Assembly (NCBI RefSeq): GCF_006345805.1 | Contig: NC_043000.1 | Coordinates: 10,788,001-10,852,000, forward strand | DNA length: 64,000 nucleotides | Source: Octopus sinensis | Lineage: Eukaryota | Direction of reading: 5' to 3' | Part shown: piece by piece, positions 2,367 to 58,370 of the stretch | How positions within the stretch are numbered: position 1 is the first letter of the stretch | How the letters are laid out: each line of letters begins with the position of its first letter | The notes under the pieces: generated by a model | Databases searched by the model: none | Told to the model about the DNA's origin: nothing | What the model saw: only the letters and a program-made list of their open reading frames with translations | Translations under genes and position numbers: made by a program

Positions 2367-2612
2367 TGGGCAGTAAAGAAATAAGAAGCTTGCTTCCCAA
2401 CCACATGGTTCTGAGTTCAGTCCCACTGTGTAGCACCTTGGGCAAGTGTCTTCTACTATAGCCTTGGGCCAACCAAAGCCTTGTGAGTGGATTTGGTAGA
2501 CAGAAATTAAAAGAAGCCTGTTGTGTATATATGTATATCTGTGTGTGTGCGTTTATTTCCTCGTAACTTAGCGGTTCAGCATGGCTGCAGTCAAATGACT
2601 GAAGCAAAAGAT
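2363..2612 (+). mobile_element. Internally deleted SINE-A preceded by a SINE-B tail stub
   Basis: CTTGTGGGCAGTAAAGAAATAAGAA (SINE-B tail), then GCTTGCTTCCCAACCACATGGTTCTGAGTTCAGTCCCACTG...CCTTGGGCAAGTGTCTTCTACTATAGCC. Confidence 0.75.
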
Positions 2613-3262: not shown

Positions 3263-3399
3263 GGGGTGTCTCAAACTAAATTATCCAATGTCAGGTTTGA
3301 CTTAAAGGAGATTGGCTGCTATTTCTACCAGGTATAGTAATCTGGTTAGTTTTGAATTATCATTGATTCTTCTGTAACTTTGCTCTTTTTTCTTCTTAG

Positions 3400-3545
3400 T
3401 ATGGGAAGTAGTCCTTATTAGCCTGGCGTCTATCCTTTGACCTAGTCAGCATGGGATGCTTAACCAGGAGATTGTGCTCTGCTAGCATAGCTCCCAAGGT
3501 TATTGAAGCACACAAGCTATCACACCCCAACAAGGACTGGATCAT
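3400..3545 (-). mobile_element. Old RTE (BovB/Expander-like) 5' UTR fragment; second copy at ~6790-6960
   Basis: TATCCTTTGACCT...ACCAGGAG...GCATAGCTC...GAAGCAC motif, shared between ~3340-3540 and ~6710-6950. Confidence 0.5.
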
Positions 3546-7261: not shown

Positions 7262-8433
7262 CAAATTCTGAATTAAAACCTTCCACCAAACCTTAGTCAT
7301 AATTTATGTTCCTAACACTAGCTTAATGATAACTAAGTTATTTCACTAAATTCTTTGTTATATTTAAAATTAATCGAAAGAAACACATAGCATCTCAACA
7401 GAAATATGGTAACAAAAGGGTTAAAATATATTACAGAGAAACAATTTTTGACCCTTTTGATACCAACCCGGCTGAAACCAGCTCTGGCTCTGAGTACAAA
7501 TGTCTTGTTTTCATAAGTTTTGAATTAAAATCTTCCATCAAACCTTAGTCACAATTTATGTTCCTAACACTAGCTGAATGATAACTAAGTTATTTTACTA
7601 AATTCTTTGTTATATTTAAAATTAATCGAAAGAAACACATAGCATCTCAACAGAAATATGGTAACAAAAGGGTTAAAATATATTACAGAGAAACAATTTT
7701 TGACCCTTTTGATACCAACCCGCTGGCTGAAACCAGCTCTGGCTCTGAGTACAAATGTCTTGTTTTCATAAGTTTTGAATTAAAATCTTCCATCAAACCT
7801 TAGTCACAATTTATGTTCCTAACACTAGCTGAATGATAACTAAGTTATTTTACTAAATTCTTTGTTATATCTAAAATTAATTGAAAAGAACACTGAGCAT
7901 TACAACAGAATATGGTAACGAAAGGGTTAAAAATATAATAGAGAAACAATTCTAACCCTTTCGTTACCAACCAGACTGAAACCGGCTCTGGCTCTGTGGT
8001 ACAAATGTCTTGTTTTCATAAGTTTTGAATTAAAATCTTCCACCAAACCTTAGTCACAATTTATGTTCCTAACACTAGCTGAATGATAACTAAGTGATTT
8101 TACTAAATTCTTTGTTATATTTAAAATTAATCGAAAGAAACACATAGCATCTCAACAGAAATATGGTAACAAAAGGGTTAAAATATATTACAGAGAAACA
8201 ATTTTTGACCCTTTTGATACCAACCCGGCTGAAACCAGCTCTGGCTCTGAGTACAAATGTCTTGTTTTCATAAGTTTTGAATTAAAATCTTCCACCAAAC
8301 CTTAGTCACAATTTATGTTCCTAACACTAGCTGAATGATAACTAAGTGATTTTACTAAATTCTTTGTTATATTTAAAATTAATTGAAAAGAACACTGAGC
8401 ATTACAACAGAAATATGGTAACAAAAGGGTTAA
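7262..8433. repeat. Tandem array of ~252-bp units (MITE family 1 plus ~25-bp spacer), ~4.7 copies
   Basis: GGGTTAA ends at 7424, 7676, 7930, 8181 and 8433. The shared spacer is AATATATTACAGAGAAACAATTTT. Confidence 0.92.
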
Positions 8434-9902: not shown

Positions 9903-10308
9903 TTTACTCTTACTTGTTTCAGTCATTTGACTGTGGCCATGCTGGAGAACTGCCTTTAGTCAAGCAAATCGACCCCAGGACTTATTCTTTGTAAGCCTAG
10001 TACTTATTCTATCGGTCTCTTTTGCTGAATCGCTAAGTTATGGGGACGTAAACACACCAGCATCAGTTGTCAAGCGATGTTGGGGGGGGGGGATGGCAAA
10101 CACAGACACACAAACATATACACACACACACATACATATATACGACGGGCTTCTTTCAGTTTCTGTCTACCAAATCCACTCACAAGGCTTTGGTCGATCC
10201 GAGGCTGAGGCTATAGTAGAAGACACTTGCCCAAGGTGCCACGCAGTCGAACTGAACCTGGAACCATGTGGTTGGTAAGCAAGCTACTTACCACACAGCC
10301 ACTCCTAC
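9903..10308 (-). mobile_element. Full-length SINE-A (tRNA head, CORE-like block, internal microsatellite)
   Basis: Minus strand: GGAGTGGCTGTGTGGTAAG, GGTTCAG B-box-like motif, CCTTGGGCAAGTGTCTTCTACTATAGCC and a GAAACAAGTAAGAGTAAAG tail. Confidence 0.88.
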
Positions 10309-15283: not shown

Positions 15284-15660
15284 ATTGCCCTTTTCTTTGG
15301 CCCACAGAGTACTTGATTCAGATGCACATTTGTTGTCATGTCTTGGATCTATGTTAAAGAAAGCCGATAATTTCCTTTGTGACATAAGGTCCTTAAATAT
15401 CACTCACATAACATTAACAATGGTGCAGATATTGCCAATTCCACGTATGAGAATTTAGACCCTCACAACTGTTCTGGGCATAACAACCCTGATGGAGCCA
15501 TAACTAAATATTTGAAAGTAACAATGAATGTAAAACTACTATTAACAATACCAGTGTATATTTGTATACTAGTAATAGGGTACTGCTTAAATACAGAGGT
15601 CCCTTAATGGTACTACTTACATACAGAGGTCCCAACTGTGTGGACGTGTAATGACACCTT

Positions 15661-16110
15661 AAAACTAACTCCCAAAACTAACCCTAACCCTGACTCTAAA
15701 ACTTAACCCTAAAAATTAACCCCGTAAACTAACCCTAAAAACTAACCTTAAAAATTAACCCTAAAAACTAACCCTAAAAACTAACTGTAACCCTGACCCT
15801 AAAAACTAACCCTGGAAACTAACCCTAAAACTGACTCCCAAAACTAACCTTAACCCTGACCCTAAAACCTAACCCTAAAAATTTACCCTGTAAACTAACC
15901 CTAAGAACTAATCCTAACCCTGACCCTAAAAACTAACCCTGAAAACTAACCCTAAAAACTAACCCTAAAACTAACTCCCAAAACTAACCTTAACCCTGAC
16001 CCTAAAACCTAACCCTAAAAATTAACCCTGTAAACTAACCTTAAAACTAACCCTGACCCTAAGAACTAACCCTGAAAACTAACCCAGAAAACTAACCCTA
16101 AAAACTAACC
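15661..16110. repeat. Degenerate telomere-like array (AAACTAACCCT / AACCCTGACCCT units)
   Basis: Dozens of CCCTAA/CCCTGA motifs with A-tract spacers. The ACTCCCAAAAC marker recurs three times. Confidence 0.92.
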
Positions 16111-16221
16111 GTAATGAGTGTGCACTGTAAAAACATCATTACGTAGATGCATCAGGACTTCTGTATTTAAACGGAACCTCGGTATTTAAGTAGTGCCAGT
16201 AATAGTAGTATACTAGTAATA

Positions 16222-17039
16222 GTAAAAGTAAAGATACCATCTTGAGTTATACCGAGTCACAAGGGCTGATTTCCTGGTTTCATGGCATATATATTCCCTG
16301 TCTGAATGAGACACTAGTCTGTCGCAGGATGACTGGGATGGAGCCAGCCTACGTATGCATACCTTCCCTTCTTGGGACACAAAACTCTACTTGTGAAGAC
16401 CTGTTGAGGCAAGTGAGGATCAGAATCGAAATCGATCAATGGAAATTGCAGATGTGTTACCAGTGCCGGTGGCATGTCGAAACTCTACTTGTGAAGACCC
16501 GTTGAGGTAAGTGAGGATCAGAATGGAAATCGATCAATGGAAATTGCAGATGTGTTACCAGTGCCGGTGGCATGTAAGAGAACCTTCCGTTTCGCGACCG
16601 TTGCCAGCACCGCCCCGTTTCGTGTCCGTTGCCAGCCTCGCCTGGCCCTTGTGCCGGTGGCACATAAAAAGCACCATCCGTTCGTGGCCGTTTGCCAGCT
16701 CTGTCTGGCACCTGTGCGGGTGGCACGTAACAAGCACCCACTACACTTACGGAGTGGTTGGCGTTAGGAAGGGCATCCAGCCGTAGAAACACTGCCAGAT
16801 TTGACTGGGCCTGATGAAGCCTTCTAGCTTCACAGACCCCAGTAGAACCGTCCAACCCATGCTAGCATGGAAAACGGACGCTAAACGACGATGATGATGA
16901 TGATGATGAGTGGAATGGAGCAATGTGATATGAAGTGTTTTGCTCAAGAACACAATGCGTCACCCAGTCCAAGTATTGAAACTACAACCTTACGATCATG
17001 AGTCTAACACCCTAACCACTAGACCACGTGCTTCCACTG
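16222..17039 (-). mobile_element. Full-length SINE-D with 11-bp TSD, interrupted by an RTE 3' end
   Basis: TSD TACTAGTAATA at 16211-16221 and 17040-17050. tRNA-like head GTGGAAGCACGTGGTCTAGTGGTTAGG on the minus strand. Confidence 0.85.
16331..16906 (+). mobile_element. 5'-truncated RTE LINE with an internal ~105-bp tandem duplication
   Basis: AAACTCTACTTGTGAAGACC...GTGCCGGTGGCATG occurs twice, then the family core and a (GAT)n tail. Confidence 0.88.
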
Positions 17040-17519: not shown

Positions 17520-17694
17520 ACAGCTAATAATGCATCACCCATATTCTGTGAGAAGACATGCAGTTTCAGAGTACATAGTAGTCTCTTTGAGGAACAATTG
17601 CTTACATTATAATGTTTATAAATGTACCTTTACCACCACATTGACCCACTCTGCCAGAATTTTTATTGGTGGAACATTTGAACTGTTTACTCTT

Positions 17695-18700: not shown

Positions 18701-19269
18701 TTTTCTTTCTTGATTCTATTAACTGATATTTTTCATTACTAATTCTACCTGAAGCAACTCCACCAATCTCTTCCCTTCCAATCTTTTCCTCAATGTTCCT
18801 GTCTTTACTATCCCACTCAACCCCTTGTATTTAGTTTCCCATTGACCCTATTTATAAAAACTACACTATTTGTTGCCAGAGTTTTCTGATGAGAATAACT
18901 GGAGTCCTCATCTTGGATCTTTCAAAATCCATGTTAATTCATAACCTACTATATTATTGGACCTTATTACATAACATATAGTCATGGCACCAGTCATTGT
19001 TTATCTGAAACAGCTGTAAAGATAAGACTTACATCATTCATTATGGGTGACTATGTGTCTAGGTTATGAACCAATATTTACATCTAATTCATTTTTAAGC
19101 ACTTTCAGAATCTCTGATCATTATTAAGTATCTCTTTGCTGTAGGTGTACATAATACCAGACTGGACTCAAAATAAGGATCTTATTTCTGAAGTAATGGT
19201 AGTAACATTCTTATATATGATGTCTCTGTTGTATTATAATAACAATGTTAGCTGCTGAAGCTAAAGAAA

Positions 19270-19434
19270 GGTGTGGCTGTGTGGTAAGAAGCTTGCTTCT
19301 CAACCACATAGTTCCGGGTTCAGTCCCACTGCGTGGCACCTTGGGCAAGTGTCTTCTACTATAACCTTAGGCTGACCAAAGCCTCGTGGGTGGATTTGGT
19401 TGACGTAAACTGAAAGAAGCTCATTGTGTGTATG

Positions 19435-19511
<77 letters not shown>

Positions 19512-19512
19512 G
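19270..19512 (+). mobile_element. SINE-A 5' half ending in a (TA)n microsatellite
   Basis: GGTGTGGCTGTGTGGTAAG...GGGTTCAGTCCCACTGCGTGGCACCTTGGGCAAG, then (TA)n. Confidence 0.85.
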
Positions 19513-20977
19513 GTAGTGCAGTGTAGAGGACAAACTCACAGCTTTAAAAGTGTTAGAATTGATGAGATTGTTTACTTGTTTGTAGAGCAGGGTTCAACCT
19601 GTACTGCAGGTCATAGAGATCAGGATCACTTCATATGGTTATTGGAGTAGTGGCACCAGTTGAGGGCATTTTCTCTACTTTGTGTTGAGTGCATTCTGTG
19701 GATGGCAATTATAGCACTAAAGTTCAAGATAACTAGCTGATGCAGAGTCAGTGGCTTGCATCCTGTACACTGGCCATCATTTCATTGTGTTCAAGACACT
19801 CACAAATGACTTGGTTTGTCTGCTTATAAGTAAAATTCACTGTTGGAAGCAGTGGGTTAGATTATAGCCTATTGGGTTCTGGACAACTATATTACTACTC
19901 TTGTTGTTTCTAGCAGAAGGGGCTGAAACAAAAGGCTCAGAGTAATATGAAGGGGAAGGACTGGATAATATGTATTAAATAGGGTTCCTTTCCCCACCAG
20001 ATTATTTTGATTTTATCATGATTTTTCAAAAAGAAAACAAAAAAAAACTCATACTTATATTTTACAATTAACTCCCTCTCCCCTAAATTTTAACTGAATA
20101 AAAATTGCTTTAAGGAGAGAATTTATTCATATTTTTTAAAAAATCAAATAATTTATCATTTCGAAAATGGTAAATATCTTTTTTTTTATTTATAAAATAT
20201 ATTTTTAAATTCAATACCAGTTCAAATATGTTGGGAATATATTCAAACCTACAAGAAAGCCATTCCATGTGTTTTGTCATGGAGAAAATTTCTTGCTATT
20301 GACAAAATTTTTAAATGTTAGAAACCCCCTTTGTCCCACAGAACCCTTGGAAGTTTTTTCCATAGAACCTAGTCTAAGAAATTCTTGCAATAAGGCATTC
20401 ATTCAGTGTTTCGAATTACTTATTCTACCAGACACAAAGCTCCTATGCTGTCACTGAACCACTCAACATGCTAGAAATAGCAATTAAATCTCTTTCAAAT
20501 TACACTTTACTTTTTTTTTCAAAATCCTATTGGATTGTCCTAGGCACACTGTTTGTTGAAAGATCGGAGGATGGTCAGTATTGGAATGTCTTCGACCATA
20601 AGGTGTGCTCAATCTGGGATGACTTGTGGCTAAACAACAACTCTGCCACATCTGTCACTAAATTATTAATTAGTTACATTAATTAAAAAGGTAAAAAATT
20701 TTTTTGTTGTTTTGTTTTGGCATTTCAATTATATCAAAGGCATGGTTTTTTTAAGGGACAGTAAAACAGATAATTAATTAAAGCCTGTTCGTGTTGTTTA
20801 TGTTCAACAGTGTGTGTGTGTGTGTGGACTTATTTTGAATTTTGATATATTTTCTTGTCTTCCCTCACACATGATGAGGTCTTTTGACAATCAAATTCTA
20901 CCTCCTTAATAACTTCTCATTTGTTATGTTTTCATCTAGTTTTCTGTATGATGTGTTCTTTCTGTTCAACCCTTGAT

Positions 20978-21062
20978 TTATATATATATGTGTGTGTATA
21001 TATATATATATATATGTGTGTGTATATATATATATATATGTATATATGTGGATATATGTGTA

Positions 21063-21104
<42 letters not shown>

Positions 21105-21164
21105 GTATATATATATATATATATAATATATATATATATAATATATATATGTATATATAATATA

Positions 21165-21195
<31 letters not shown>

Positions 21196-21213
21196 TATAT
21201 TATATATAATATG

Positions 21214-21245
<32 letters not shown>

Positions 21246-21324
21246 ATATGTAAATATATGTATATGTATGTATATATATATGTATGTGTATATATATATA
21301 TATGTGTATATATATGTATATATG

Positions 21325-21373
<49 letters not shown>

Positions 21374-21556
21374 TATATATATACATATATATACATACAT
21401 ACACACACACGTGTATGTATGCATTTCTATGTATATGTATGCATATGTGTGTATGAACATATGTGTATTTGTATATATGTATGTGTATATGTATATATAT
21501 ATATGTGTCGGTGTGTGTGTGTCTATGTATGTATGTATATATATATATATATATAT
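20978..21556. repeat. ~580-bp compound (TA)n/(TG)n/(TATG)n microsatellite
   Basis: Directly visible. It accounts for the YIYI/CVCV ORFs. Confidence 0.97.
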
Positions 21557-21915
21557 CATCCGAGCGTGGCCGTCTGCCAGCCTTGTCTGGCACCTGTGTC
21601 GGTGGCACATAAAAAACACCATCCGAGCGTGGCCGTCTGCCAGCCTCGTCTGGCACCTGTGTCGGTGGCACATAAAAAACACCATCCGAGCGTGGCCGTT
21701 TGCCAGCCTCGTCTGGCACCTGTGTCGGTGGCACATAAAATCACCCACTACACTCTCGGAGTGGTTGGCGTTAGGAAGGGCATCCAGCTGTAGAAACACT
21801 GCCAGATCTGACTGGACTGGTGCAGCTTTCGGGCTCCCCAGACCCCAGTTGAACCGTCCAACCCATGCTAGCATGGAAAGCGGACGTTAAATGATGATGA
21901 TGATGATGATGATGC
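21556..21915 (+). mobile_element. RTE 3' UTR with 3 copies of a 63-bp unit
   Basis: CATCCGAGCGTGGCCG...GGCACCTGTGTCGGTGGCACATAAAA x3, then the core and (GAT)n. Same subfamily as 58371. Confidence 0.9.
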
Positions 21916-23810: not shown

Positions 23811-23980
23811 AGGGCATGATGTTAGGAAGGGCATCCAGCTGTAGAAACTTTGCCAGATCAGATTGAGCCTGGTGCAGCTTTCTGACTCACCAGTCCTCAG
23901 TCACATCGTCCAACCCATGCTGGCATGGGTTGGACGATGTGACTGGAAAGCAGATGTTAAACGATGAAGATAATGATGAT
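23598..23980. mobile_element. Two RTE tails in opposite orientation flanking (TA)n
   Basis: Minus copy at 23598-23770 and plus copy at 23815-23980. Confidence 0.85.
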
Positions 23981-24107: not shown

Positions 24108-24176
24108 TCTGAAGAACCAAAACCGAAGAGAGCACGGGGTCGACCGAAAGGAAGTAAAAACAAGAAACCTTCTAAG
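24108..24176 (+). CDS. 69-nt phase-0 coding exon encoding an AT-hook (SEEPKPKRARGRPKGSKNKKPSK)
   Basis: TTTCCAG acceptor, AAG|GTTGGT donor, exactly 23 codons. RGRP core with an HMGA-like KGSKNK extension. Confidence 0.8.
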
Positions 24177-24240
24177 GTTGGTGCAAATTCTTTAAAATGT
24201 CGCATGTCACGTCTGAAATGTTGTGTGCCATACCATATCT

Positions 24241-24381
24241 GAAATTTTGTGTGTCCTATTTGAAATTTTGTGTGTCCTATTTGAAATTTTGTGTGTCCTA
24301 TTTGACATTTTGTGTGTCCTATTTGAAATTTTGTGTGTCCTATTTGACATTCTGTGTGTTCTAATTGAAATTTTGTGTGTT
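24241..24381. repeat. 21-bp minisatellite, ~6.7 copies
   Basis: GA(A/C)ATTTTGTGTGTCCTATTT at 24241, 24262, 24283, 24304, 24325, 24346 and 24367. Confidence 0.95.
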
Positions 24382-25344
24382 TATCTGCATGATTAATTGG
24401 TGTTTGCTTTGTATTTCATAGGATCTCTTTGAAAAACAAGTTAGTTCCATTGCTTTTGATTTTTGCATATTTGACACCTAATGGAGTCAGATTACACTGC
24501 AATGATTATATCCATAATCACATTGATCATGTTGCCTATTTTGGTTTCAATCTTATTTATATTTATTTCATTGAATGATGTCACAATGTTTGCAATGTTT
24601 GATTTGTGCCTTGTAAATATTGTTGAAGAAGCTAGCAATAATTTTAAAATAGCTAGAATATCAGTGGAAGTTGTTGTTTAAGTCCTGACCAAAGATATTC
24701 CAGCCATGACATCTTGTCTTTTGATCAGACAGTGAATCTAGAACTACATTATATCCAATGAATCCTTCCTTTCCTAAAACAAATGGGGCATTTTTTTAGG
24801 GAGATTCAGCTGCTATTTCTAGTCTGTTGAATGAACACATAGAAGAGGCTCCTTTTTTGTTGATGAAAATGTAATGTAGAGATGGAGATGAGCCAGTATG
24901 GATGCTGTTCCTTCTATAAAAGACAATAAGCATTTGTCTTACTGGGAAACACGGTGTGTTGAGTTACTCCTTACTCTTAAAATTTTAAACTGGTTAATAG
25001 TCCTAATTGTGTTTAAAAAGTGTTTGTGCGTTTGATGTATGTGTTTGACAGTCTTCTGTTAAAGGTTGGTGTTCATTATGTATTTGATTAAAGCTGTACC
25101 TGATGAAATGTTTGACTGAAGTTGTATTGAAAGATGTGTTTGATTATGATTGTGGTACTGGTGGTGCTGTTGGTAGAATCATTTAAGAGACTGAAACATA
25201 AATAGTTATTGACTAAGGGTAAAATATTAAATACAAGTTATGTGTTCAATATATATTATGATTACTAATCATCATCATTATGTTATGATCATTGTCAATC
25301 TCATCCTATTCTACATTTGGGTACTTTTATCTATATATTTAGCT

Positions 25345-25740
25345 TGCTTGCCAATCATGTGGTTTTGGGTTCAGTCCCACTGCATACACCTTGGGCAATT
25401 GCCTTCTAAAGCCTTGGATCAACCAAAGCATCGTGAGTGAATGAGGTTGAGGGAAACTGAAAGAAGCCCACCATGTGTGTGTGTGTGTGTATGTATCCTT
25501 TCTAGTTATCGTGATGGTTGTAAATGAGCATCATTGTTATATAAGTGAGGTTATTTGTTTCCAGTCTTCTATGAAATGTGTAGCTATGAGAAAATATTAG
25601 CCTTGCTTGGAAACAGGCTCTATAGTTGGCACTAGGAAGGGGATCTGGCCATAGAAAAATCTGCTTCAACAAATTCCATCTCATTCATGCAAGCATAGAA
25701 AAGTGAGGCATTAATTGATGATGATGATGGTGATGATGAT
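25345..25740 (+). mobile_element. SINE-H
   Basis: GGGTTCAGTCCCACTGC...CCTTGGGCAA head and a CATGCAAGCATAGAAAAG...(GAT)n tail. Confidence 0.65.
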
Positions 25741-25874
25741 GGACTGCATCTATCACAAAGGCAACACTATGAAAGTGTGATAACTAAGATGAAGGCCTTG
25801 CAGTTTGATACCTATGCTAATGAATAATGCATACTGGGTAAATAATTATTGAAAGATGGTGCAAATGGTTAGAG

Positions 25875-26075
25875 CAGTGGTTTTCAACCAGGGTTCCGCG
25901 AATACAGTCCAGGGGTTCCGCAAGAAGTTACAAAACTGCTAAAATCGGCAGTAATTTTTAATTCTCCTGTGCAGATATGTGTGCATAAGACTATTAAATT
26001 ATTGCACAGGGGTTCCTCGAGCCAGTGGAATGTTTCCTTGGGGTTCCGCTCCAGCCAAAAGTTTGAAAAGCACTG
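25875..26075. mobile_element. hAT (Charlie-like) MITE with perfect 8-bp TSD
   Basis: GGTTAGAG|CAGTGGTTTTCAACC ... GTTTGAAAAGCACTG|GGTTAGAG. Confidence 0.93.
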
Positions 26076-27049
26076 GGTTAGAGTACAAGAACAGCTTGAG
26101 TAAAAGAGAACGTAGATCTGATAAGATGGGGCTTCACATATGAAAAATATATTGAAGACTCATTCAGCACACACCATCATGGGAACATAGAGATGGTGGT
26201 GGTGGTAGTGGATATAGTGATCAAGCGAGGCTGTGGATGTGGGTATATTCTTTGTGTTGCATTTGATGTGTATGAAATGCGTTTCTGGTGTGTTACTTTT
26301 ATCTGTCTTTTACAATTAATAGCAGGCAAGGCTTTTGTAGTTCAGCTCACTTTGAACCTGGAACCATATGGTTCCAGGTTTGATACCATTGCACAGAAAA
26401 TTGCAAAGTTATAGATTGCCTGAGGTTGGCCAATGTTCTATGAATAAAATTTTTTATGTGTGTGTGTATCAGTATGAAGTGAATTAAAAATAATGTATCA
26501 AATACAAACACCTTGTAGGAGCCATACCTACCTGAGTTATTTATCTTTCTTCATACCAAAAAAGACAAACAAAAACAAAACAATGAGTTACCTTTTATTT
26601 AAAGGAAATAATGAAGAAAATAAACACTCTTGAAAGTGATGCTCCAAGAGGGCTGTAGTATCTATGGCTGATACCAGTAAAAAATATAAGAAAATTTGGT
26701 GTATGGATGTTTGGGTGGAAACTGTCCTTGTCTGTTATCATGACAGTGGTACTGACATGCATACGCTCTCTCTCTCTCTCTCTCACACACACATATCCGG
26801 AGACAAATCATGTACGTATGACAAATATGCTAGTCATAAGATATAAATTAGTTTACATATTTAAAAAATTTAATCACTGAAGTTAATTAGTCAGGGTATT
26901 GATTATGTATAATAAAATTTTCAATAGAAGAAAAAAATTGATTATCTATAAACTTTTTAATGAAATACTATAAATTCTGACTTGAAACAGCTTAACTAGC
27001 AACACATACTGATTCTTTTCTAAATTGTTATCAACTTTTGAAATACAGG

Positions 27050-27476
27050 TTTCAAGTCTTGGCACAAGGCCAGCAGTTTTGGGGTGGGGATAAGTTGATT
27101 ACATCAACCCTGGTACTCAACTGGTACTTATTTTATCAACCCCTGATACGTCGAAAGGCAAAGTTGACCTTAGCAGCATTTGAACTCAGAGCGTAACAAT
27201 GAACAAGCATTTTGCTTGGCTTGCTAACAATTCTGCAAGTTTGCCACCTTCAAATTTTGAAATATTTACTCTTTTACTTGCTTCAGTCATTTGACTGTGG
27301 CCATGCTGCAGCACCGCCTTTAGTTGAGCAAATCGATCTAGGACTTATTCTTTGTAAGCCTAGTACTTATTCTATCAGTCTCTTTTGCTGAACTGCTAAG
27401 TTACAGTGATGTAAACACACCAGCATCGGTTGTCAAGCGATGTTAGGGGGACAAACATATACGCATACATACATAT

Positions 27477-27527
<51 letters not shown>

Positions 27528-27690
27528 TACAACGGCTTCTTTCAGTTTCCGTCTACCAAATCCACTCACAAGGCTTTGGTCAGCCCGAGGCTATAGTAGA
27601 AGACACTTGCCCTAGGTGCCATGCAGTGGGACTGAACCCAGAATCATATGGTTGGCAAGCAAGTTACTTACCACATAGCCACTCCTATAC
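27050..27690 (-). mobile_element. Old SINE-B (27050-27255) followed by SINE-A (27265-27690)
   Basis: Reverse complements of both family signatures. Confidence 0.8.
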
Positions 27691-28454
27691 CTATGTTATT
27701 GTTAGCAAATACTTTATAAATTGTTAGATAATAGATACAGACTTTAAAGTGGCTATTGTGAGTTAACCACTACAGATTTTGAAATGGCTATTATTAACTA
27801 GTCATTACAGATCTTAAAGTAGTCCAGGGTCTATACTGAAATATATTTGACTCCTGTGAAAGACATTATCTACTTGTGTTGTAAATGGTAGCTACACAGT
27901 TGATTTGACCTATATATTTAACCCTTTCGTTACCTTTTTTCTCATGCCTTATTTTCAATGAATTTGGAAAATAACGAATTATTTAGAAAAATAACTGTCT
28001 TATTTAAGCTGGTGTTAGGCAGTGAATTGGCAGAATTGTTGGCATGCCAGGCAAAATTTTTATTGGCATTTTGTCTGTCTTTGTATTCTGAGTTCATATT
28101 GTGCTAGGGTTGACTTTACATTTGACCTTTCGATAAAATGAGTACCAATTTATCACTGGGGCCTTTGTAACTCACTTATCCCCTCACCTGAAATTACTAG
28201 CCATGTGCTTAAATTTGAAACCATTATTAAGATGGTGTGAAGGTGGAAAGCTGACAGAATCTTAGTACATCAGGCAAAATGCTTAGCAATATTTTTTCTG
28301 GTTTTACATTTTGAGTTTAAATTCTACCAAAGTTGATTCTGCTTTTTATCCTTCCAGAGTCAATAAGATAGGTACCAGTTGAGCTTTTCCCCCTGAAATT
28401 TCAGACCTTGTGCCTACAGTAGAAAAAATTATTAAGCTAGTGTTTAGAACATTG

Positions 28455-28595
28455 GTATTAGGAAGAGCATCCAGCTGTAGAAACTCTACCAGATCAAGAT
28501 TGGAGCCTGGTGCAGCCATCTGGTTCGCTAGCCCTCAGTCAAAATCGTCCAACTCATGCTAGCATGGAAAGCGGACCTTAAACGATGATGATGAA
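28455..28595 (+). mobile_element. RTE 3' tail
   Basis: TTAGGAAGAGCATCCAGCTGTAG...GCATGGAAAGCGGACCTTAAACGATGATG. Confidence 0.85.
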
Positions 28596-28733
28596 TGTTT
28601 AGAACATAATTTAATGTGAACTTTTGATGGAAGGCTTTGATTTAGATCATTTTTAAACAAGAGGTTATTGTAGAACTAGGAGCAGTCATGGGTGGGTTGG
28701 TATCAGAAGAATTAATAAAACATCAGTACAACT

Positions 28734-28883
28734 ATTAATAGTTATCGCCAAGCTAATATGGCAGTCCATGAATATAGGATGAAAGCTGCCGTTGATTAGC
28801 TCCAAGAGGCCATCGCCTCTAGCTATATGACACACGAACCTGTGTCCATGGACTGCCATATTAGCTTGGCAATAACTATTAAT
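28734..28883. repeat. 37-bp inverted repeat, fold-back derivative of a repeat also present at 30572-30742
   Basis: 28734-28770 versus 28847-28883, one mismatch. Confidence 0.9.
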
Positions 28884-29077
28884 GTCCAGTACTGCTGCCA
28901 TAGTCTCCTTTAGAGAGACTTAGAAATAGTAATATTTCTATCAGTACAACTATGATTACTGATAGATCCATTAATACTGATATCAGTTACTGGAATTTAT
29001 TTATTAACTGTTGATAACTAGATCATTATTTGTCATTGACCTACTATTGTCTTCTTCTCACCACATAATATATTCAA

Positions 29078-29474
29078 CTAGCAGTATCGCCCGGCGTTGC
29101 TCAGGTTTGTAAGGGAAATAACTATATAAGCATTTTTAGAGAGTTATAGCCAAAAAATAGCAAAAAAATGCATTAAAATGGGAAAAAAATGATGGTAAAT
29201 TTTTTTTTAAATCATTGACTCATCGTAGACATTTTTAGAGAGTTACTTCCCTTATATAATAGCGAAAAAATGCGTTAAAATGGGAAAAAATGATGGTAAA
29301 TTTTTTTTTAAATCGTAGACTCATCGTAGACGTGCGCTAATACCCAGAAGGGCTCGATATGAATCACGACTATAAGATACCCGGTTTTGGTTAAACTGCA
29401 CCGCAAAATGTGGGAGTAGTTAGGAATCTAAATCGAAGGGGACAGACACACAACTTCTCTTTTATATATAAAGA
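29078..29474 (-). mobile_element. Non-autonomous Helitron-like element
   Basis: A|CTAGCAGTATCGCCCGGCGTTGCTC ... TTTTATATATAAAGA|T. Nearly identical to 34381-34779. Confidence 0.8.
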
Positions 29475-29500
29475 TTACCCTTTTGATGCTCTCTGCATTA

Positions 29501-30343
29501 AATATGTTGGATCTTTTCCTTTTGAACGGCACTTTTCAACACAATTTCTAGTTTACTAAACACTTGTAAACTTCGTTTACTGGTAGAATGTGTTTATAAA
29601 ACATCATTTTTTCTTGGCTTTATTGAGAAAATTCTATATGTTGTAAGATATTTTGTCTTTAATTTCGAGCATTTCGGCAATTTTAACCAATCGCTTACGT
29701 CCATTTACGTAAATAACATTCTGTGCATAATGAATATGTCCCTCCTTTAAGAAACAGATTGGGTTTATTTACATTTGTGAAGAAAAAAAGATACCCTTCC
29801 CCCACCCCTAACCCTAAATCTAACTAACCCTAACTCTCACCCTAAATCTAAAATAAATTGAAATGCAATAGATCGATACTAAGGTTATAATTATAGGTGA
29901 CAATTTCATACGATACCGCTACGGAAAATGGGATTTTTTTCTAGCGGTGTCAAATGAAAATGTCACCCATAATTATGGCCCTAGTATCGATCTATTGCAT
30001 TTCAATCTATTTTAGATTTAGGGTGAGAGTTAGGGTTAGGGGTGGGGGAAGGGTATTTTTTTCTTCACAAATGTAAATAAACCCAATCTGTTTCTTAAAC
30101 GAGGGACATATTCATTATGCACAGAATGTTATTTACCTAAATGGACGTAAGCGATTGGTTAAAATTGCCGAAATGCTCAAAATTAAAGACAAAATATCTT
30201 ACAACCAATAGAATTTTCTCAATAAAGCCAAGAAAAAATGATGTTCTATAAACACATTCTACCAGTAAACGAAGTTTAAAACTTTTTAGTTGCCTAGAAA
30301 TTATGTTATAAAGTGCCGTTCAAAAGGAAAAGATCTAATATGT
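29501..30343. mobile_element. ~840-bp palindromic fold-back element with telomere-like motifs in both arms
   Basis: 29501-29909 is the near reverse complement of 29954-30343, with an inner stem ACCGCTA/TAGCGGT. Confidence 0.9.
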
Positions 30344-30424
30344 TAATACTAACTTAACTACTGTAAATACACCACTCTGAGATCTATATAATGATTACAG
30401 TACACACACTCACACACATACATG

Positions 30425-30501
30425 CAGGGTGACCAAAAATTTGCTCAACCATTTAATATATACAAATATATTAAATGGTAGCTTCAGTTTTGGGCCACCT
30501 G
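30425..30501. mobile_element. Tiny Tc1-like MITE remnant
   Basis: CAGGGTGACCAAAA / TTTTGGGCCACCTG ends and a perfect inner 14-bp stem (30448-30461 / 30466-30479). Confidence 0.55.
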
Positions 30502-30760
30502 TGTGTATGTGTATGTTTGTACACATATACATATACATACATAAATTTATATATATATATATATATGCAGATGCCTGACCAGCAAGGGGAAGCGGCTGAC
30601 CTCCCTTGTTCGAAGGTTATAATGGACACAGGCTCGTGTGTCACATAGCTAGCTAGAGGCGATGGCCTCTTGGAGCTAATCAATGGCAGCATTCGTCCTA
30701 TATTTCTGGACTGCCATATTAGCTTGGCGATAACTGTTGATATATATATATACACATACA

Positions 30761-30980
30761 CGAAGGGCTGCTGAAAAGTTCCTGGCTTTGGGTAAAAGAA
30801 AATAAATGAGGATCAGTTACTTATGATTTTATTCAACAAATCCCCCTCTCAGATACACACACATATTGCAATGGTCCTTCAGTTTTTCTAAGCCCTGTAA
30901 AAGAACACAGAAGATTGGGCCTCCAACCAGACCTTTCATAATACCCTTAAAGCCAGGAACTTTTCAGCTCCTTCTCCTGT
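30761..30980. mobile_element. Mariner-like MITE (copies at 48741-48948, ~51332-51450 and ~51687-51800)
   Basis: CGAAGGGCTGCTGAAAAGTTCCTGGCT ... AGCCAGGAACTTTTCAGC TIR-like ends in TA context. Confidence 0.75.
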
Positions 30981-31144
30981 GCATGTATATGTATGTATGT
31001 ATAATACATACACATACACACACACATATTCCTATAAATCTAATTCATTGACAGCCTTGTTTAATTTGTTCTCCAAAAGCTACACTTATTTTTCCATTTG
31101 TGGTAAATCTGTTTTTTCTCTTTTTTGTCTTCGTTTCTCTTCAG

Positions 31145-32728
31145 TTTCAGGAAATTTTGAGGCCTGTAAAGTACAAGGCATTGCTTAAGGTTCAGAAAAA
31201 CAAAACTGTTTCTAAGAAGTCTCTACATAAATGGTCAAAAAGAATGATTCATGATCTTCAGGCAAATCCTACCCAACTCCAAAACGTTCAAACTGATAGT
31301 TCAAATAACCCTAATAGGGTAAATAATAAATTTGCCAATTCAAAAAACAACGGTTTGAAGAAAATGAAGAATTCTGTGATGCCTCAAAATTCGTCTAAAT
31401 GTAAGACCAATCAAGGTTCAGTTATTTCTAATCACAGTAAGAAAAGACCTGAAGTCACTGTCCCAAGAAAAATTAAAACATCAATGAACAGCAAATGTCA
31501 AGTAGATAAGAAATGTGACCCGACAAAAATGAATTCTAAATCTATACATTTTCCAAACAACAATCAGGGTCAGAGAATCCTATCCAGTCGTAAGAACTCT
31601 GCCATAACGAAGCAGCTTCAAACTCCTGTTAATTACAGAAGGAAAAGTTGTGGGTTATGTGATCAATCATCAGTTCGTAGACATAAAGCTACATCCAAAC
31701 GCTTTTGCAGTGACCCATCGTCATACAAATGCAGCCGGTCGTTACCAACTCTGAGGAGATCTCAACGGATAAGAACTATTTGTGATAAATTTTCAAATTC
31801 AACCATCAGTAGTGAAAACTCGCCACCATCTTCTGCAGTTTATTATTCTTCGCCTGGATTTTTAGTGCCATTACGAAGGCGCCGGTCTTCTAAAACTGCT
31901 CATTCCACTCAGACACAGCTTCGGAATGTTTCTCAACCCTGTTCTTCACATCATTCCCCTGCTGCTGTTAATAGCACTACTAGTCTTTCCTCTCATACCA
32001 CTGGTACTACTACCACTACTATTACTACTACTACTACTACCACAGGTCTTTCTTCTCCTGCCGCTGCACCTCCTTCTTCTACTGCTTCTTCCCCTCCATC
32101 TTCTGTATTGTCTGCTTCTACTAACAATTTACATCACCTCTCTTCTTTATCACAATCTACACCCAAGGATTTTCCATTTGAGTGCCAAGCTGGTGGTTTC
32201 ACACCAGCTAATCAGTCTAAAGACATGACAGATGCTGTACACATAGTTAGACCTTGCGGTCAACTTTCTCCTAACAACTGTTCAATGAAAATGTTGAAGT
32301 GTCACCGGTTGCGCCACATGGCACCAGGATCAGGAGATGTGGCAGCAACTAGCGTAGTTTGCAGACACCACTGTTCCGCTGCCAGACACTTGGACAACAA
32401 ATGTCATAACATGCATATGAATACACAACCATGCCTTCCAAACATCAGATCAGCTGTTCAAGTGGCTGCTTCTATGATTTCGTCAAGAATTACCGACAAG
32501 AGCGTCAGCATCTATAACCATTCTTTAGGAAAACAATCTGGAAGTGTGTGCCAATCTTACGAACAACTCAATATTGTACTGAGTCCATTTGAAAAACAGA
32601 TTTTCGAACTGCACCGACAAGAACATGAACAAAGAATGGCAATGGAAGAAGAGCGACATCAAATGAAAATGGATCTCATGCGATTGAAGAAAAAGGCTTT
32701 AGAGAGTAAACTAAAACTAAAGAATTAA
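31145..32728 (+). CDS. Long terminal coding exon: basic/low-complexity protein with an S/T/P tract and a C-terminal coiled coil
   Basis: ~527 open codons in very AT-rich DNA. Strong polypyrimidine tract with two phase-0 acceptors (after 31144 and after 31150). Ends ELHRQEHEQRMAMEEERHQMKMDLMRLKKKALESKLKLKN*. The GTG start at 31100 is intronic. Confidence 0.85.
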   Translation, partial: FQEILRPVKYKALLKVQKNKTVSKKSLHKWSKRMIHDLQANPTQLQNVQTDSSNNPNRVNNKFANSKNNGLKKMKNSVMPQNSSKCKTNQGSVISNHSKKRPEVTVPRKIKTSMNSKCQVDKKCDPTKMNSKSIHFPNNNQGQRILSSRKNSAITKQLQTPVNYRRKSCGLCDQSSVRRHKATSKRFCSDPSSYKCSRSLPTLRRSQRIRTICDKFSNSTISSENSPPSSAVYYSSPGFLVPLRRRRSSKTAHSTQTQLRNVSQPCSSHHSPAAVNSTTSLSSHTTGTTTTTITTTTTTTGLSSPAAAPPSSTASSPPSSVLSASTNNLHHLSSLSQSTPKDFPFECQAGGFTPANQSKDMTDAVHIVRPCGQLSPNNCSMKMLKCHRLRHMAPGSGDVAATSVVCRHHCSAARHLDNKCHNMHMNTQPCLPNIRSAVQVAASMISSRITDKSVSIYNHSLGKQSGSVCQSYEQLNIVLSPFEKQIFELHRQEHEQRMAMEEERHQMKMDLMRLKKKALESKLKLKN

Positions 32729-36644: not shown

Positions 36645-37016
36645 TACCAATGTTCTTTGATGAGCAATGATTTAGATAGTTCTCTTTCTATATAATAAAC
36701 AACAAATTTCACAGGAACATACTCATGTTCCAACAATTTTTACCAAAATATATTTTAAACCTTTTTATGTTAGATTTTGCTAATCCCTGATAGAGTTAAT
36801 TGCTAATTCTTTGAAGCAGAATTACACAAGGTTAGTTTTATATTCAGATATCATATTCCTGAATTTCGTCTCTAATTCAGTGGATTGTGAAAAAATGCAT
36901 TCACTTTACTTCAACAAGCATCAGTATTGCTTCTGAAAGGAATATTTCTTTAACCATTTAGCCATATCAGACCCAAATATTCAACCTGTTTTATATTTCA
37001 AACTGGAATATAAATA

Positions 37017-37321
37017 GTGGAGGCACATGGCCTAGTGGTTAGAGCAGCGGACTCATGGTTGAGGGATCGTGGGTTCGAATCTCAGACCAGGTGATGTGTG
37101 TGTTTATGAACAAAACACCTAAGTTCCATGTGGCTCTGGCAGAAGGTAATGGCGAACTTCTGCTGACTCTTTCGCCACAACTTCTTCCCACTCTTTCCTC
37201 CTGCATCTTGCAGCTCACCTGCAATGGACCAGCGTCTCATCCAGGTGGGGAAGCTATATGCCAAGGAAACCGGAAAACTGGCCCTTATGAACCAAGCATG
37301 GCTCGAGAAAGAACAAACATG
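37017..37321 (+). mobile_element. SINE-F (tRNA head as in SINE-E, tail as in SINE-D) inserted in a MITE
   Basis: A box TGGCCTAGTGG and B box GGTTCGAATC. TTCAAACTGG is repeated on both sides. Confidence 0.85.
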
Positions 37322-37863
37322 TTCAAACTGGCCAGATCCTGCCTCTATACCTACCCTACAATTCATTCTAAAAAATAAACAATCACATCATTGAAATTTC
37401 AAAGCTACAAATATGTTATATTCAATTTTGAAAATACAAGATGATATGTTCAAAACAATGTGAATAAATTATTCTTACATTTAACTGAAAGATTTTATAT
37501 AATTACACTGTTAATTGTATGTTAATTGTATCTTGGTCTTCCAAGCCTTTTCTTTCAAAATTGTCAAATATTTACCTGCTGTTAGAGTAACTGGTATTAT
37601 TGTAGTAAGACAAGAATAAACATCGAAGTTCTTCTTTTATAAACACCAAATACTCTTGTGCCTTTAGAAGCTCCTTTACCCCTGTGCCTTTATCTGTACA
37701 CATACTCCTTTATTTATTCTGCAGACACCAACACTCCTCTATTCTTATAGACATCAATATTTTTACATTAACTGTTAACAGAAAACACCTTTATCTCTAT
37801 AGACTGACAATTATACTTTCATGTCTCTGCTGTACTCCTCTAGCCATAGATACTTGTATTCCT

Positions 37864-38410
37864 GTATTCACTGGTACTTGGTACATTTGAGTTTCCACTG
37901 GTACCTGTACTCCTGTCTCCACAAACATCTTTATGCTTGTTTTCATAGGCATCTGTACTTCAGTATTTTCTGGTACCATTTCCACTGTACTTGTGTATCT
38001 CCATTGACACCTGGACTGTCTTTGATATGTCTTCTTGTATCTCTTCAAAGACACGTCTCCACCTATATTTGTCCTTTTGTCACCAGCCTCTTATGCCCTG
38101 TTGATACTTCTACACATCTATCTCCACGGTCACTAGTATTCACTGGTACTTGGTACATTTGAGTTTCCACTGGTACCTGTACTCCTGTCTCCACAAACAT
38201 CTTTATGCTTGTTTTCATAGGCATCTGTACTTCAGTATTTTCTGGTACCATTTCCACTGTACTTGTGTATCTCCATTGACACCTGGACTGTCTTTGATAT
38301 ATCTTCTTGTATCTCTTCAAAGACACGTCTCCACCTATATTTGTCCTTTTGTCACCAGCCTCTTATGCCCTGTTGATACTTTTACACATCTATCTCCACG
38401 GTCACTAGTA
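37864..38410. repeat. 272-bp near-perfect tandem duplication
   Basis: GTATTCACTGGTACTTGG at 37864 and 38136. The units differ at only a few positions. Confidence 0.95.
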
Positions 38411-38929
38411 CTTTCTTTTCTCTATAAAGCAACTGCACTCCGTTCTTTAAAATACTGCCTTCCACTTCTATTTGATGGCAAAAGATGAAGTGTTGTTGAA
38501 AGAGGACCACCAAACCATCCTCAAGCCATTCCCATAAACCCATTATCATTTTTCTTTTATTGGAACAAGGATTGTGAAATAGCTGAGAATATCAGTCTTA
38601 GTAGTCCATAAAAGTCATATCACAAGAATTCTACCTCCCAACAACACATTCCATTTTCAAATGTTCCAGTTGTCTTCAAAGAATTTTTCTTACAAAATTG
38701 AAATAAAATTATTTTTAAACTCAAAATGAATAAAATTGTAAAATTTTCCCTTCATATTTTGTTTTTAACAAAAAAAAAAAAAACTTATTGTATTTGCTTT
38801 TTATATTGTTTTCTGTTGTTTTTAATTTTTGATGTACAGCTCCAGGTCAACTATGACTATCCTGTCATTTTTCGGGCATAGTATATTATCCAATGAGTTT
38901 TTTTTCTTATAACACTTAAAACTTGCTAA

Positions 38930-55913: not shown

Positions 55914-55946
55914 AAAGATCTCGTGAAGAAACAGCGCAGCAAAACG
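55914..55946 (+). CDS. Candidate 33-nt micro-exon (KDLVKKQRSKT in phase 0, or x-RSREETAQQN-x in phase 1)
   Basis: GTTATGTTTTCCAG acceptor and ACG|GTGAGT donor. Length is divisible by 3, and it is CpG-rich against its surroundings. Confidence 0.45.
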
Positions 55947-58308: not shown

Positions 58309-58370
58309 CATCATCACCATTTAATGTCTGTTTTCTATGCTGGCATGGGTTGGATATATATAATATATGT

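What the first reader, a model, noticed from the sequence alone, without database searches (positions are those of the whole stretch)
24108..32728. Probable unannotated-type chromatin protein gene: HMGA-like AT-hook exon in phase with a 1.6-kb low-complexity/coiled-coil terminal exon
Seen: a phase-0 exon encoding PKRARGRPKGSKNKKPSK and, 7 kb downstream, a phase-0 acceptor opening ~527 codons of K/N/S-rich, then S/T/P-rich sequence ending in an E/R/M/K-rich helix. Known: RGRP is the AT-hook minor-groove binder, and PRGRPKGSKNK is characteristic of the second HMGA hook. Similar C-terminal helices occur in Myb/SANT- and MADF-type (Harbinger-related) proteins. Inference: if joined, this is an AT-hook plus long disordered region plus coiled-coil protein unlike short canonical HMGA, interesting in a genome full of (TA)n. 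Upstream exons were not found.
Basis: partly seen in the sequence, partly recalled or inferred. Interest (0 to 1): 0.7.

Follow-up and report, generated by a model that had tools for sequence, protein, structure and literature searches.

The report
Octopus HMGA gene's long alternative isoform
The AT-hook exon and the 1.6-kb open reading frame are real and are joined in an existing but misnamed octopus gene model: the long frame is an octopod-conserved alternative last exon inside the big intron of an HMGA-type chromatin gene that also makes an ordinary short HMGA-like protein.

Summary
Both features exist as described. Window 24108-24176 (+) is a 23-codon, phase-0 exon encoding SEEPKPKRARGRPKGSKNKKPSK. 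Window 31145-32728 (+) is a 527-codon terminal coding exon behind a conserved acceptor. Joined, they are 100% identical to residues 31-580 of RefSeq XP_029635809.1 (Octopus sinensis, 580 aa). That model is misnamed 'probable serine/threonine-protein kinase dyrk2': it has no kinase domain. So the predicted join is already annotated.

The same hook exon is also exon 2 of short 'HMGI-C-like' models (96-103 aa: two AT-hooks, optional micro-exon, acidic tail) in O. vulgaris and O. bimaculoides. The micro-exon lies at 55914-55946. The hook-1 exon and the acidic-tail exon lie just outside the window. The long exon therefore sits inside the large intron of an HMGA-type gene as an alternative last exon. 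Argonauta has the same exon order.

The long exon looks coding. The frame is open in four octopods, all three indels are in frame, and dN/dS is 0.53 overall and 0.24 in the C-terminal module. No start codon is conserved. No relative was found outside octopods, and no Myb/SANT/MADF similarity.

I saw no RNA evidence for the junction. Function is inferred. Interest is modest.

The parts
24108..24176 (+). Exon 2 of the octopus HMGA-type gene, carrying the second AT-hook: SEEPKPKRARGRPKGSKNKKPSK. 69 nt, phase 0 at both ends. Shared by the short and long isoforms.
   Evidence: Translation and splice sites. Identical peptide in P0003, P0004 and P0020. Identical exon in O. vulgaris, and a 69-nt counterpart in Argonauta. 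One of the few unique Argonauta-Octopus conserved blocks in the window.
31085..31144 (+). Conserved polypyrimidine tract and splice acceptor (…ttctcttcag|) of the long alternative last exon.
   Evidence: The last ~60 nt of the intron are identical in O. vulgaris, near-identical in L003 and still alignable in Argonauta. The proximal cag at 31148-31150 is cgg in L003.
31145..32728 (+). Alternative terminal coding exon, 527 codons plus TAA. It is the C-terminal 527 aa of the 580-aa long isoform.
   Evidence: 100% identical to XP_029635809.1 residues 54-580. Open in O. vulgaris (527 codons), L003 (520) and Argonauta (513). Indels of 21, 3 and 3 nt only, against 14 mostly out-of-frame indels in the 3' flank. 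dN/dS 0.53.
31634..31666 (+). Invariant island YRRKSCGLCDQ (protein residues 217-227).
   Evidence: Invariant in the three-species alignment. Coordinates. Part of a unique nucleotide match to Argonauta.
31739..31771 (+). Conserved island SLPxLRRSQRI (residues 252-262).
32279..32407 (+). Cys/His-rich stretch (residues 432-474) with invariant C, C, H, C, C-H positions. A possible metal-binding site, untested.
   Evidence: Invariant columns C47, H52, C71, C81 and H82 of alignment A3 (C40 is invariant only in the three-sequence alignment A2, because P0016 starts after it). Composition 8% C and 9% H. AlphaFold2 confidence is low here.
32435..32725 (+). Most constrained C-terminal module (residues 484-580). 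It includes the invariant NIVLSPFEKQIFELH and the predicted 46-residue terminal helix (32585-32722).
   Evidence: dN/dS 0.24 over the last 127 codons. 60% identity to Argonauta over the C-terminal 188 aa. Helix with pLDDT 74-96. Coordinates. Nucleotide similarity to Argonauta ends at the stop codon.
55914..55946 (+). 33-nt, phase-0 micro-exon KDLVKKQRSKT of the short HMGA-like isoform (ttttccag|…|gtgagt). It lies 23 kb downstream of the long exon.
   Evidence: tblastn match to the KDLMKKQHSKT segment of O. bimaculoides XP_014783342.1. Splice sites. Conserved unique block against Argonauta.

Best explanation
The whole window lies inside one roughly 70-kb HMGA-type gene of an octopus. The sequence matches Octopus sinensis.

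Exon 1 (AT-hook 1, just upstream of the window) and exon 2 (AT-hook 2, window 24108-24176) form a common DNA-binding N-terminus. From exon 2 the transcript can end in two ways:
- (a) It skips about 32 kb to the micro-exon (55914-55946, optional) and then the acidic-tail exon just beyond the window. This gives a 96-103-aa, two-hook, acidic-tailed, HMGA-like protein.
- (b) It splices to the acceptor at 31144/31145 and terminates in the 1.58-kb exon. This gives a 580-aa protein in which the acidic tail is replaced by a very basic, probably disordered region, a conserved Cys/His-rich stretch and a 46-residue terminal helix.

Shown:
- The exons, their order and their phases.
- Conservation of that order across Octopus and Argonauta.
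- Coding-type constraint on the long exon.
- The existence of both gene models in public databases.

Inferred:
- Both forms are made from one promoter by alternative last-exon choice.
- The long form tethers its C-terminal module to AT-rich DNA through the two hooks.
- The terminal helix mediates self-association or partner binding, so that losing the acidic tail and gaining the helix changes how the hooks act on chromatin, for example by bridging AT-rich tracts.
- The two forms carry different 3' UTRs.
For: Join and identity. XP_029635809.1 (P0020) is hook 1 + hook 2 + long exon. Residues 31-580 are identical to window 24108-24176 plus 31145-32725.

Short isoforms share exon 2. P0003 and P0004 contain the same 23 aa followed by an acidic tail.

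Exon order.
- O. vulgaris L004: hook 1 at 3380-3469, hook 2 at 28746-28814, long exon at 36958-38538, micro-exon at 62150-62185, tail at 73794-73892.
- Argonauta L001: 10001-10090, 17600-17668, 19220-20761, 27475-27504, 29985-30068.

The long exon needs an upstream coding exon.
- Conserved acceptor and polypyrimidine tract.
- Phase 0 in four species.
- No in-frame ATG between the upstream stop and the acceptor in any of them.
- First Met at non-conserved codons 34, 34, 74 and 39.

No other unique conserved block lies between exon 2 and the long exon.

Coding constraint.
- In-frame indels only.
- dN/dS 0.53 overall and 0.24 in the C-terminal module.
- 7 synonymous versus 4 non-synonymous differences between O. 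sinensis and O. vulgaris.
- Similarity to Argonauta stops at the stop codon.

HMGA character. 62% identity over 52 aa, collinear with coelacanth HMGA2 hooks 1 and 2.

Structure and charge. One long confident terminal helix, the rest low-confidence. Net charge +66, pI 10.4.

Literature.
- Vertebrate HMGA2 has a large third intron in which truncated or chimeric, tail-less forms arise (PMC11291832).
- Forms that lack the acidic tail keep DNA-binding specificity but alter protein interactions (PMC11291832).
- That review also cites Hauke et al. 2002 on a novel exon inside HMGA2 intron 3.
Against: - I saw no RNA evidence. The junction rests on predicted gene models.
- The Argonauta model may have been built or named with the O. 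sinensis protein as a guide, so the two models may not be independent.
- A junction-spanning protein search found no transcript-derived ORFs. That search also missed known octopod relatives, so it is uninformative.
- Phase compatibility alone is a 1-in-3 event.
- Most of the exon evolves fast (dN/dS 0.6-0.8 in the first 300 codons). Its nucleotide identity to L003 (86%) is no higher than that of the flanks.
- In the original O. bimaculoides annotation the short HMGA and a 147-aa piece of the long exon are separate entries.
- The O. sinensis long model has a different name from the HMGI-C-like models of the other species. I could not determine whether any single annotation treats them as one gene.
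- DNA binding, oligomerisation and metal binding were not tested.
Confidence: 0.8

Rival explanations
1. The 1.6-kb ORF belongs to an independent gene nested in the HMGA intron, with its own promoter and 5' exon. The models that join it to the AT-hook exons are prediction artefacts.
For: - The original O. bimaculoides annotation has separate entries for the short HMGA (A0A0L8G7M6) and a fragment of the long exon (A0A0L8G7M0).
- The long and short models carry different names in different species.
- No RNA evidence was available to me.
- The Argonauta model could be homology-guided.
Against: - No in-frame ATG is conserved at the 5' end of the exon, yet coding conservation runs up to a conserved acceptor.
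- Between the hook-2 exon and the long exon, nothing else unique is conserved between Argonauta and Octopus that could be a private first exon. In Argonauta that interval is only about 1.55 kb.
- The phases match in all species.
Confidence: 0.12
2. The long exon is an intronic ORF of no protein-level function, used rarely or cryptically. It would be comparable to the incidental exon reported in human HMGA2 intron 3, and the only functional product would be the short HMGA-like protein.
For: - dN/dS is 0.6-0.8 over the first 300 codons.
- Nucleotide identity is no higher than in the flanks.
- There is no recognisable domain.
- No relative was found outside octopods.
Against: - A frame of 513-527 codons stays open in four octopods, including Argonauta at 43-48% protein identity.
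- All three indels are in frame, against 14 mostly out-of-frame indels in the 3' flank.
- dN/dS is 0.24 in the last 127 codons, with long invariant runs such as NIVLSPFEKQIFELH.
- The chance expectation of such a frame is about 5e-11 per window.
Confidence: 0.04
3. The protein is what its database name says, a DYRK2-type protein kinase. Alternatively, it is a Myb/SANT/MADF (Harbinger-related) type protein.
Against: - No Pkinase, Myb, SANT or MADF match even at E<=10 in P0020, P0002 or P0001.
- No PDB sequence match with a single sequence or with a profile.
- The exhaustive profile search returned only octopod proteins.
- The name most likely reflects low-complexity similarity. This is my inference.
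Confidence: 0.01

Closest known systems
Vertebrate HMGA2 (HMGI-C), and HMGA1
   Same: - The N-terminus is collinear with HMGA2: hook 1 (KRxRGRPRK), a spacer, then hook 2 (PKRxRGRPKGSKNKKPSK). Identity to coelacanth HMGA2 is 62% over 52 aa.
- There is one hook per small phase-0 exon.
- A very large intron follows the hook exons.
- The short isoform ends in an acidic tail.
   Different: - Only two AT-hooks. The third (EKRPRGRPRKW in P0011) is absent from every octopod model, and no further RGRP-coding exon lies on the + strand of the window.
- The long isoform is about five times larger than any HMGA and has no acidic tail.
Tail-less or chimeric HMGA2 forms from the large third intron (tumour fusions such as HMGA2 joined to ectopic C-termini; the 'novel exon' in intron 3 of Hauke et al. 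2002, cited in PMC11291832)
   Same: The AT-hook exons are kept. The acidic tail and the normal 3' UTR are replaced by sequence encoded inside, or brought into, the big intron downstream of the hooks (PMC11291832).
   Different: - Here the replacement is a germ-line alternative last exon conserved across octopods and under coding constraint. It is not a somatic rearrangement or an incidental short exon.
- It adds 527 residues with a conserved C-terminal module.
Multi-AT-hook satellite-binding proteins (Drosophila D1; the 'chromosomal protein D1-like' proteins of frogs found)
   Same: These are larger proteins that use HMGA-type hooks (RGRPKGSKNK) outside the ~100-aa HMGA format.
   Different: - Those proteins multiply the hooks (6-10) and keep an acidic end.
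- The octopus long form has two hooks and a unique non-hook extension.
- There is no sequence similarity outside the hooks.

Membership tests
HMGA (high mobility group A) | AT-hook core R-G-R-P flanked by basic residues | tested here: met
   RARGRPKGSKNK in the window exon, and KRKRGRPRK in exon 1 of P0020, P0003 and P0004. Pfam AT_hook scores are just below threshold, 16.5 against a 17.4-bit cut-off in P0003. This is my judgement of what is usual for a 13-residue model.
HMGA (high mobility group A) | Three AT-hooks | tested here: not met
   All octopod models have two. The window + strand has no further RGRP or GRP[RK] coding exon, apart from one inside a dispersed repeat. The third hook of coelacanth HMGA2 aligns only back onto hook 1.
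HMGA (high mobility group A) | Acidic C-terminal tail | tested here: inconclusive
   Met for the short isoform: …DDIESDGAGDGSKDDMDDEGTD, with tail pI 4.05. The tail exon is present in O. vulgaris and Argonauta. Not met for the long isoform, which ends in a basic helix.
HMGA (high mobility group A) | Small (~100 aa), intrinsically disordered protein | tested here: inconclusive
   The short isoform is 96-103 aa. The long isoform is 580 aa, with low-confidence (probably disordered) sequence apart from a 46-residue helix.
HMGA (high mobility group A) | Collinear sequence similarity to bona fide HMGA, and hook-per-exon gene structure with a large intron after the hooks | tested here: met
   BLASTP of P0004 against Latimeria HMGI-C: 62% over 52 aa, E 3e-16 pairwise. 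Exon map.
DYRK2 / protein kinases (the database name of the long model) | Protein kinase catalytic domain | tested here: not met
   No Pkinase hit at E<=10 in P0020, P0002 or P0001. No PDB hit.
   No such Pfam family at E<=10. The exhaustive C-terminal profile search gave only octopod proteins. The PDB profile search was empty.
Coiled-coil proteins | Heptad-repeat amphipathic helix that oligomerises | tested here: inconclusive
   One 46-residue helix with pLDDT 74-96. The best heptad register has 10 of 17 a/d positions hydrophobic. No multimer prediction or experiment was done.

The most novel reading that the evidence does not exclude
The 527-codon exon is an octopod-specific coding exon that arose inside the big intron of the HMGA gene. 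It would create a natural, evolutionarily fixed 'HMGA fusion protein'. Its terminal helix would self-associate, so that each complex carries four or more AT-hooks and bridges or bundles the abundant AT-rich and (TA)n tracts of the octopus genome. Alternative last-exon choice would switch the locus between an architectural HMGA and a chromatin cross-linker with a different 3' UTR.
Probability: 0.15. Interest if true: 0.6.

Novelty: new variant of a known kind. Interest (0 to 1): 0.35.

Why it matters
This corrects a misleading annotation. A protein named as a DYRK2 kinase in O. sinensis and Argonauta hians is, on the evidence here, the long isoform of the octopod HMGA-type gene.

In vertebrates, replacing the HMGA2 acidic tail and 3' UTR by foreign sequence from the big intron is known mainly as a somatic tumour event. 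Octopods appear to keep a germ-line version of the same arrangement under selection. That makes a natural system for asking what a tail-less, extended HMGA does to chromatin.

It is also an example of a long, fast-evolving, lineage-restricted coding exon attached to an ancient DNA-binding module.

It does not open a long-standing question, and the gene model itself already exists.

Tried and rejected
- Pfam on the long ORF and on the full-length proteins, at E<=1 and E<=10. No domain except sub-threshold AT_hook.
- PDB sequence search with one sequence and with a profile: nothing.
- Exhaustive HMMER search of 1.84 billion representatives with the C-terminal profile. Only octopod proteins, plus one spurious repeat protein at E 6e-4. 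I found no relatives in squids, other molluscs or other animals. Eukaryote coverage of that library is unknown to me, so this is weak evidence of absence.
- Junction-spanning protein search for transcript-derived ORFs. It returned only frog multi-AT-hook proteins and missed even the known octopod relatives, so it is uninformative.
- Search of the window for the hook-1 exon, a third hook and the acidic tail. All absent from the window. Hook 1 and the tail were later located outside it by comparison with O. vulgaris.
- L003 (Logan contig). I hoped it was a transcript, but it is genomic and retains the intron end.
- The look-up of encoding contigs for O. bimaculoides P0004: not on record.
- Literature searches for an octopus HMGA, for XP_029635809 and for 'dyrk2' with Octopus sinensis: nothing relevant.
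- Rfam and tRNA scans of the window: nothing.
- Fold search: not run. The model is a single helix plus low-confidence coil, so any matches would be meaningless.


Full report

Yes. Window 24108-24176 (+) translates to SEEPKPKRARGRPKGSKNKKPSK. It follows a tttccag acceptor and precedes a gttggt donor. The exon is 69 nt long and phase 0 at both ends.

The frame that opens at 31100 runs to a TAA at 32726-32728. It is the longest ORF in the window.
- The proximal cag is cgg in a related octopus contig, L003.
- The public protein begins this exon with FQEILRPVKY.

Given the window's base composition, about 5e-11 open frames of 527 codons are expected by chance.

- A basic K/N/S-rich part.
- An S/T/P-rich part.
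- A Cys/His-rich stretch.
- An E/R/M/K-rich end.

**2. What the two pieces belong to**

A database search with the long ORF found two proteins:
- A 508-aa ORF from another octopod, P0001 (72% identity; genomic contig L003).
- A 566-aa Argonauta hians gene model, P0002. Its N-terminus carries two AT-hooks, and the second hook runs directly into the region homologous to the long ORF.

A cluster look-up then revealed XP_029635809.1 of Octopus sinensis (P0020, 580 aa), named 'probable serine/threonine-protein kinase dyrk2'. Its sequence is hook-1 exon (30 aa), then the window's 23-aa exon, then the window's 527-aa exon. Residues 31-580 are 100% identical to window 24108-24176 plus 31145-32725. The window DNA is about 97% identical to the O. 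vulgaris locus L004.

A search with the hook region also found short proteins named 'HMGI-C-like isoform X2':
- O. vulgaris CAI9722171.1, 103 aa.
- O. bimaculoides XP_014783342.1, 96 aa.

These contain the identical 23-aa exon. In O. bimaculoides an 11-aa segment, KDLMKKQHSKT, follows it. Both end in the acidic tail ADRRNKS.NPDDIESDGAGDGSKDDMDDEGTD.

**3. Gene architecture**

Exon positions in each sequence:

| Exon | Window | O. vulgaris L004 | Argonauta L001 |
|---|---|---|---|
| Hook 1 | not in window | 3380-3469 | 10001-10090 |
| Hook 2 | 24108-24176 | 28746-28814 | 17600-17668 |
| Long exon | 31145-32728 | 36958-38538 | 19220-20761 |
| Micro-exon | 55914-55946 | 62150-62185 | 27475-27504 |
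| Acidic tail | not in window | 73794-73892 | 29985-30068 |

- The window's micro-exon reads KDLVKKQRSKT and is flanked by ttttccag and gtgagt.
- Neither the hook-1 exon nor the acidic-tail exon is in the window.
- The O. vulgaris positions place hook 1 a few kb upstream of window position 1 and the tail about 2 kb past position 64000.
- Argonauta has the same exon order in about 20 kb.
- L002 is a second Argonauta copy, 99.8% identical to L001.

The long ORF therefore lies inside the large intron between the hook exons and the tail exons of an HMGA-type gene. It ends in a conserved stop codon, so it behaves as an alternative last exon.

**4. Is the long exon a real coding exon that is spliced to something upstream?**

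*Coding constraint*
- The frame is open for 527, 527, 520 and 513 codons in O. sinensis, O. vulgaris, the L003 species and Argonauta.
- Against L003, the coding region has three indels of 21, 3 and 3 nt. The 3' flank has 14 indels, mostly not multiples of three.
- dN/dS against L003 is 0.53 overall, 0.6-0.8 in the first 300 codons and 0.24 in the last 127 codons.
- O. sinensis and O. vulgaris differ by 7 synonymous and 4 non-synonymous codons.

*Caveat.* Overall nucleotide identity in the exon (86%) is no higher than in its flanks. Most of the exon is a fast-evolving, probably disordered region. Strong constraint is limited to a few islands (YRRKSCGLCDQ, SLPxLRRSQRI) and the C-terminal ~100 residues.

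*Evidence that it is spliced to an upstream coding exon*
- The last ~60 nt of the intron, polypyrimidine tract and acceptor, are conserved even in Argonauta.
- The exon is phase 0 in all four species.
- No in-frame ATG lies between the upstream stop and the acceptor in any species.
- The first Met falls at non-conserved codons (34, 34, 74, 39), although coding similarity begins at the acceptor.

*No hidden exon*. In a sensitive Argonauta-versus-window comparison, the only unique collinear matches are:
- The hook-2 exon.
- The long exon, whose match starts at the acceptor and ends exactly at the stop.
- The micro-exon.

Everything else is dispersed repeat. No other conserved block lies between hook 2 and the long exon that could serve as a private first exon.

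**5. What I could not show**

I had no access to RNA evidence. The junction rests on predicted models, and the Argonauta model may have been guided by the O. sinensis protein. A junction-spanning search of the protein collection returned only frog multi-AT-hook proteins and missed the known octopod relatives, so it says nothing. No paper in the library mentions the accession, an octopus HMGA, or a 'dyrk2' of O. sinensis.

**6. Nature of the protein**

*The N-terminus is HMGA-like.* The octopus short isoform aligns collinearly with coelacanth HMGA2 across hooks 1 and 2. Identity is 62% over 52 aa, and RGRPKGSKNKKPSK is identical. The third hook is missing.

*The long extension has no recognisable domain.*
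- No kinase, Myb, SANT or MADF domain at E<=10.
- No PDB match.
- No relative outside octopods in an exhaustive profile search of 1.84 billion representatives.

*Predicted structure.* AlphaFold2 on the last 188 residues, with a four-sequence alignment, gives low confidence everywhere except one 46-residue helix at the very end: residues 534-579, window 32585-32722, pLDDT about 74-96. The heptad pattern is only moderate, so 'coiled coil' remains a hypothesis.

*Charge.* The long isoform is strongly basic, with net charge +66 and pI 10.4. The tail of the short isoform has pI about 4.

**7. How it most likely works (inference)**

The locus yields two proteins with the same two-hook DNA-binding head through alternative last-exon use.
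- The short form is an HMGA-like architectural protein with the usual acidic tail.
- The long form swaps that tail for a basic, probably disordered region, a conserved Cys/His cluster and a terminal helix. That helix probably mediates self-association or partner binding.
- The swap would change how the hooks engage AT-rich chromatin.
- It would also give the transcript a different 3' UTR.

The nearest known analogy is vertebrate HMGA2. Tail-less or chimeric products arise from its large third intron, and tail-less forms keep DNA-binding specificity but alter protein interactions (PMC11291832). That review also cites a report of a novel exon within intron 3 (Hauke et al. 2002). According to a review (PMC7013770), HMGA genes are present throughout animals. 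Neither that review nor my literature searches turned up a description of a mollusc HMGA.

**8. Verdict**

The structural inference is supported by existing models and by comparative evidence.
- 'Unannotated' is wrong, because both products are in public databases.
- 'A gene distinct from canonical HMGA' is wrong, because this is an alternative isoform of the octopod HMGA-type gene.

The octopod-conserved alternative last exon is a new variant of a known kind, of modest interest. The practical result is a corrected annotation.

Noticed in passing
window 24236-24380: A 21-bp tandem array (TATTTGAAATTTTGTGTGTCC, 6.9 copies) starts 60 nt downstream of the hook-2 exon donor. It is present in the same form in O. 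vulgaris and absent at the equivalent place in Argonauta. Its UG-rich units sit where an intronic splicing regulator could act on the choice of downstream exon. This was not tested.
   Followed up: partly
window 1092-1446, 16619-16738, 21557-21740, 58369-58839, 60922-61077: A 61-63-bp satellite-like unit (…GGTGCTTTTACGTGCCACCGGCAC…GGCTGGCAACGG…) recurs in tandem blocks at five sites on either strand. It explains the ORFs of 170-240 aa that are open on both strands around 21.2-21.9 kb and 58.3-59.0 kb. Related copies occur in the Argonauta locus.
   Followed up: partly
window 1490-2404 (-): A 304-aa ORF with a reverse-transcriptase domain (RVT_1, E 8e-23). This is a retroelement fragment inside intron 1 of the HMGA-type gene.
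   Followed up: no
window 20979-21556: A (TA)n tract of about 293 units, 578 bp, in intron 1.
   Followed up: no
window 15657-16114: A degenerate 13-bp array (CCTAAAAACTAAC, about 35 copies) containing many AACCCTAA-like units. It looks like an interstitial telomere-like repeat.
   Followed up: no
window 23900-23943: A perfect 19-bp inverted repeat (gtcacatcgtccaacccat / atgggttggacgatgtgac) around a 6-nt centre, about 165 nt upstream of the hook-2 exon (read directly). It is probably part of a dispersed element. Not examined.
   Followed up: no
L001 and L002 (Argonauta hians BAAFZT010000006.1 and BAAFZT010000002.1): The whole HMGA-type locus is present twice in the Argonauta assembly, on two different large sequences, at 99.8% identity over 30 kb. 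The two protein entries are identical. This is either a very recent duplication or an assembly or haplotype duplicate.
   Followed up: partly
window 7269-8433 and 37864-38410: Two large-period tandem duplications: 252 bp x 4.6 at 92% identity, and 272 bp x 2.0 at 99%. Nature unknown.
   Followed up: no
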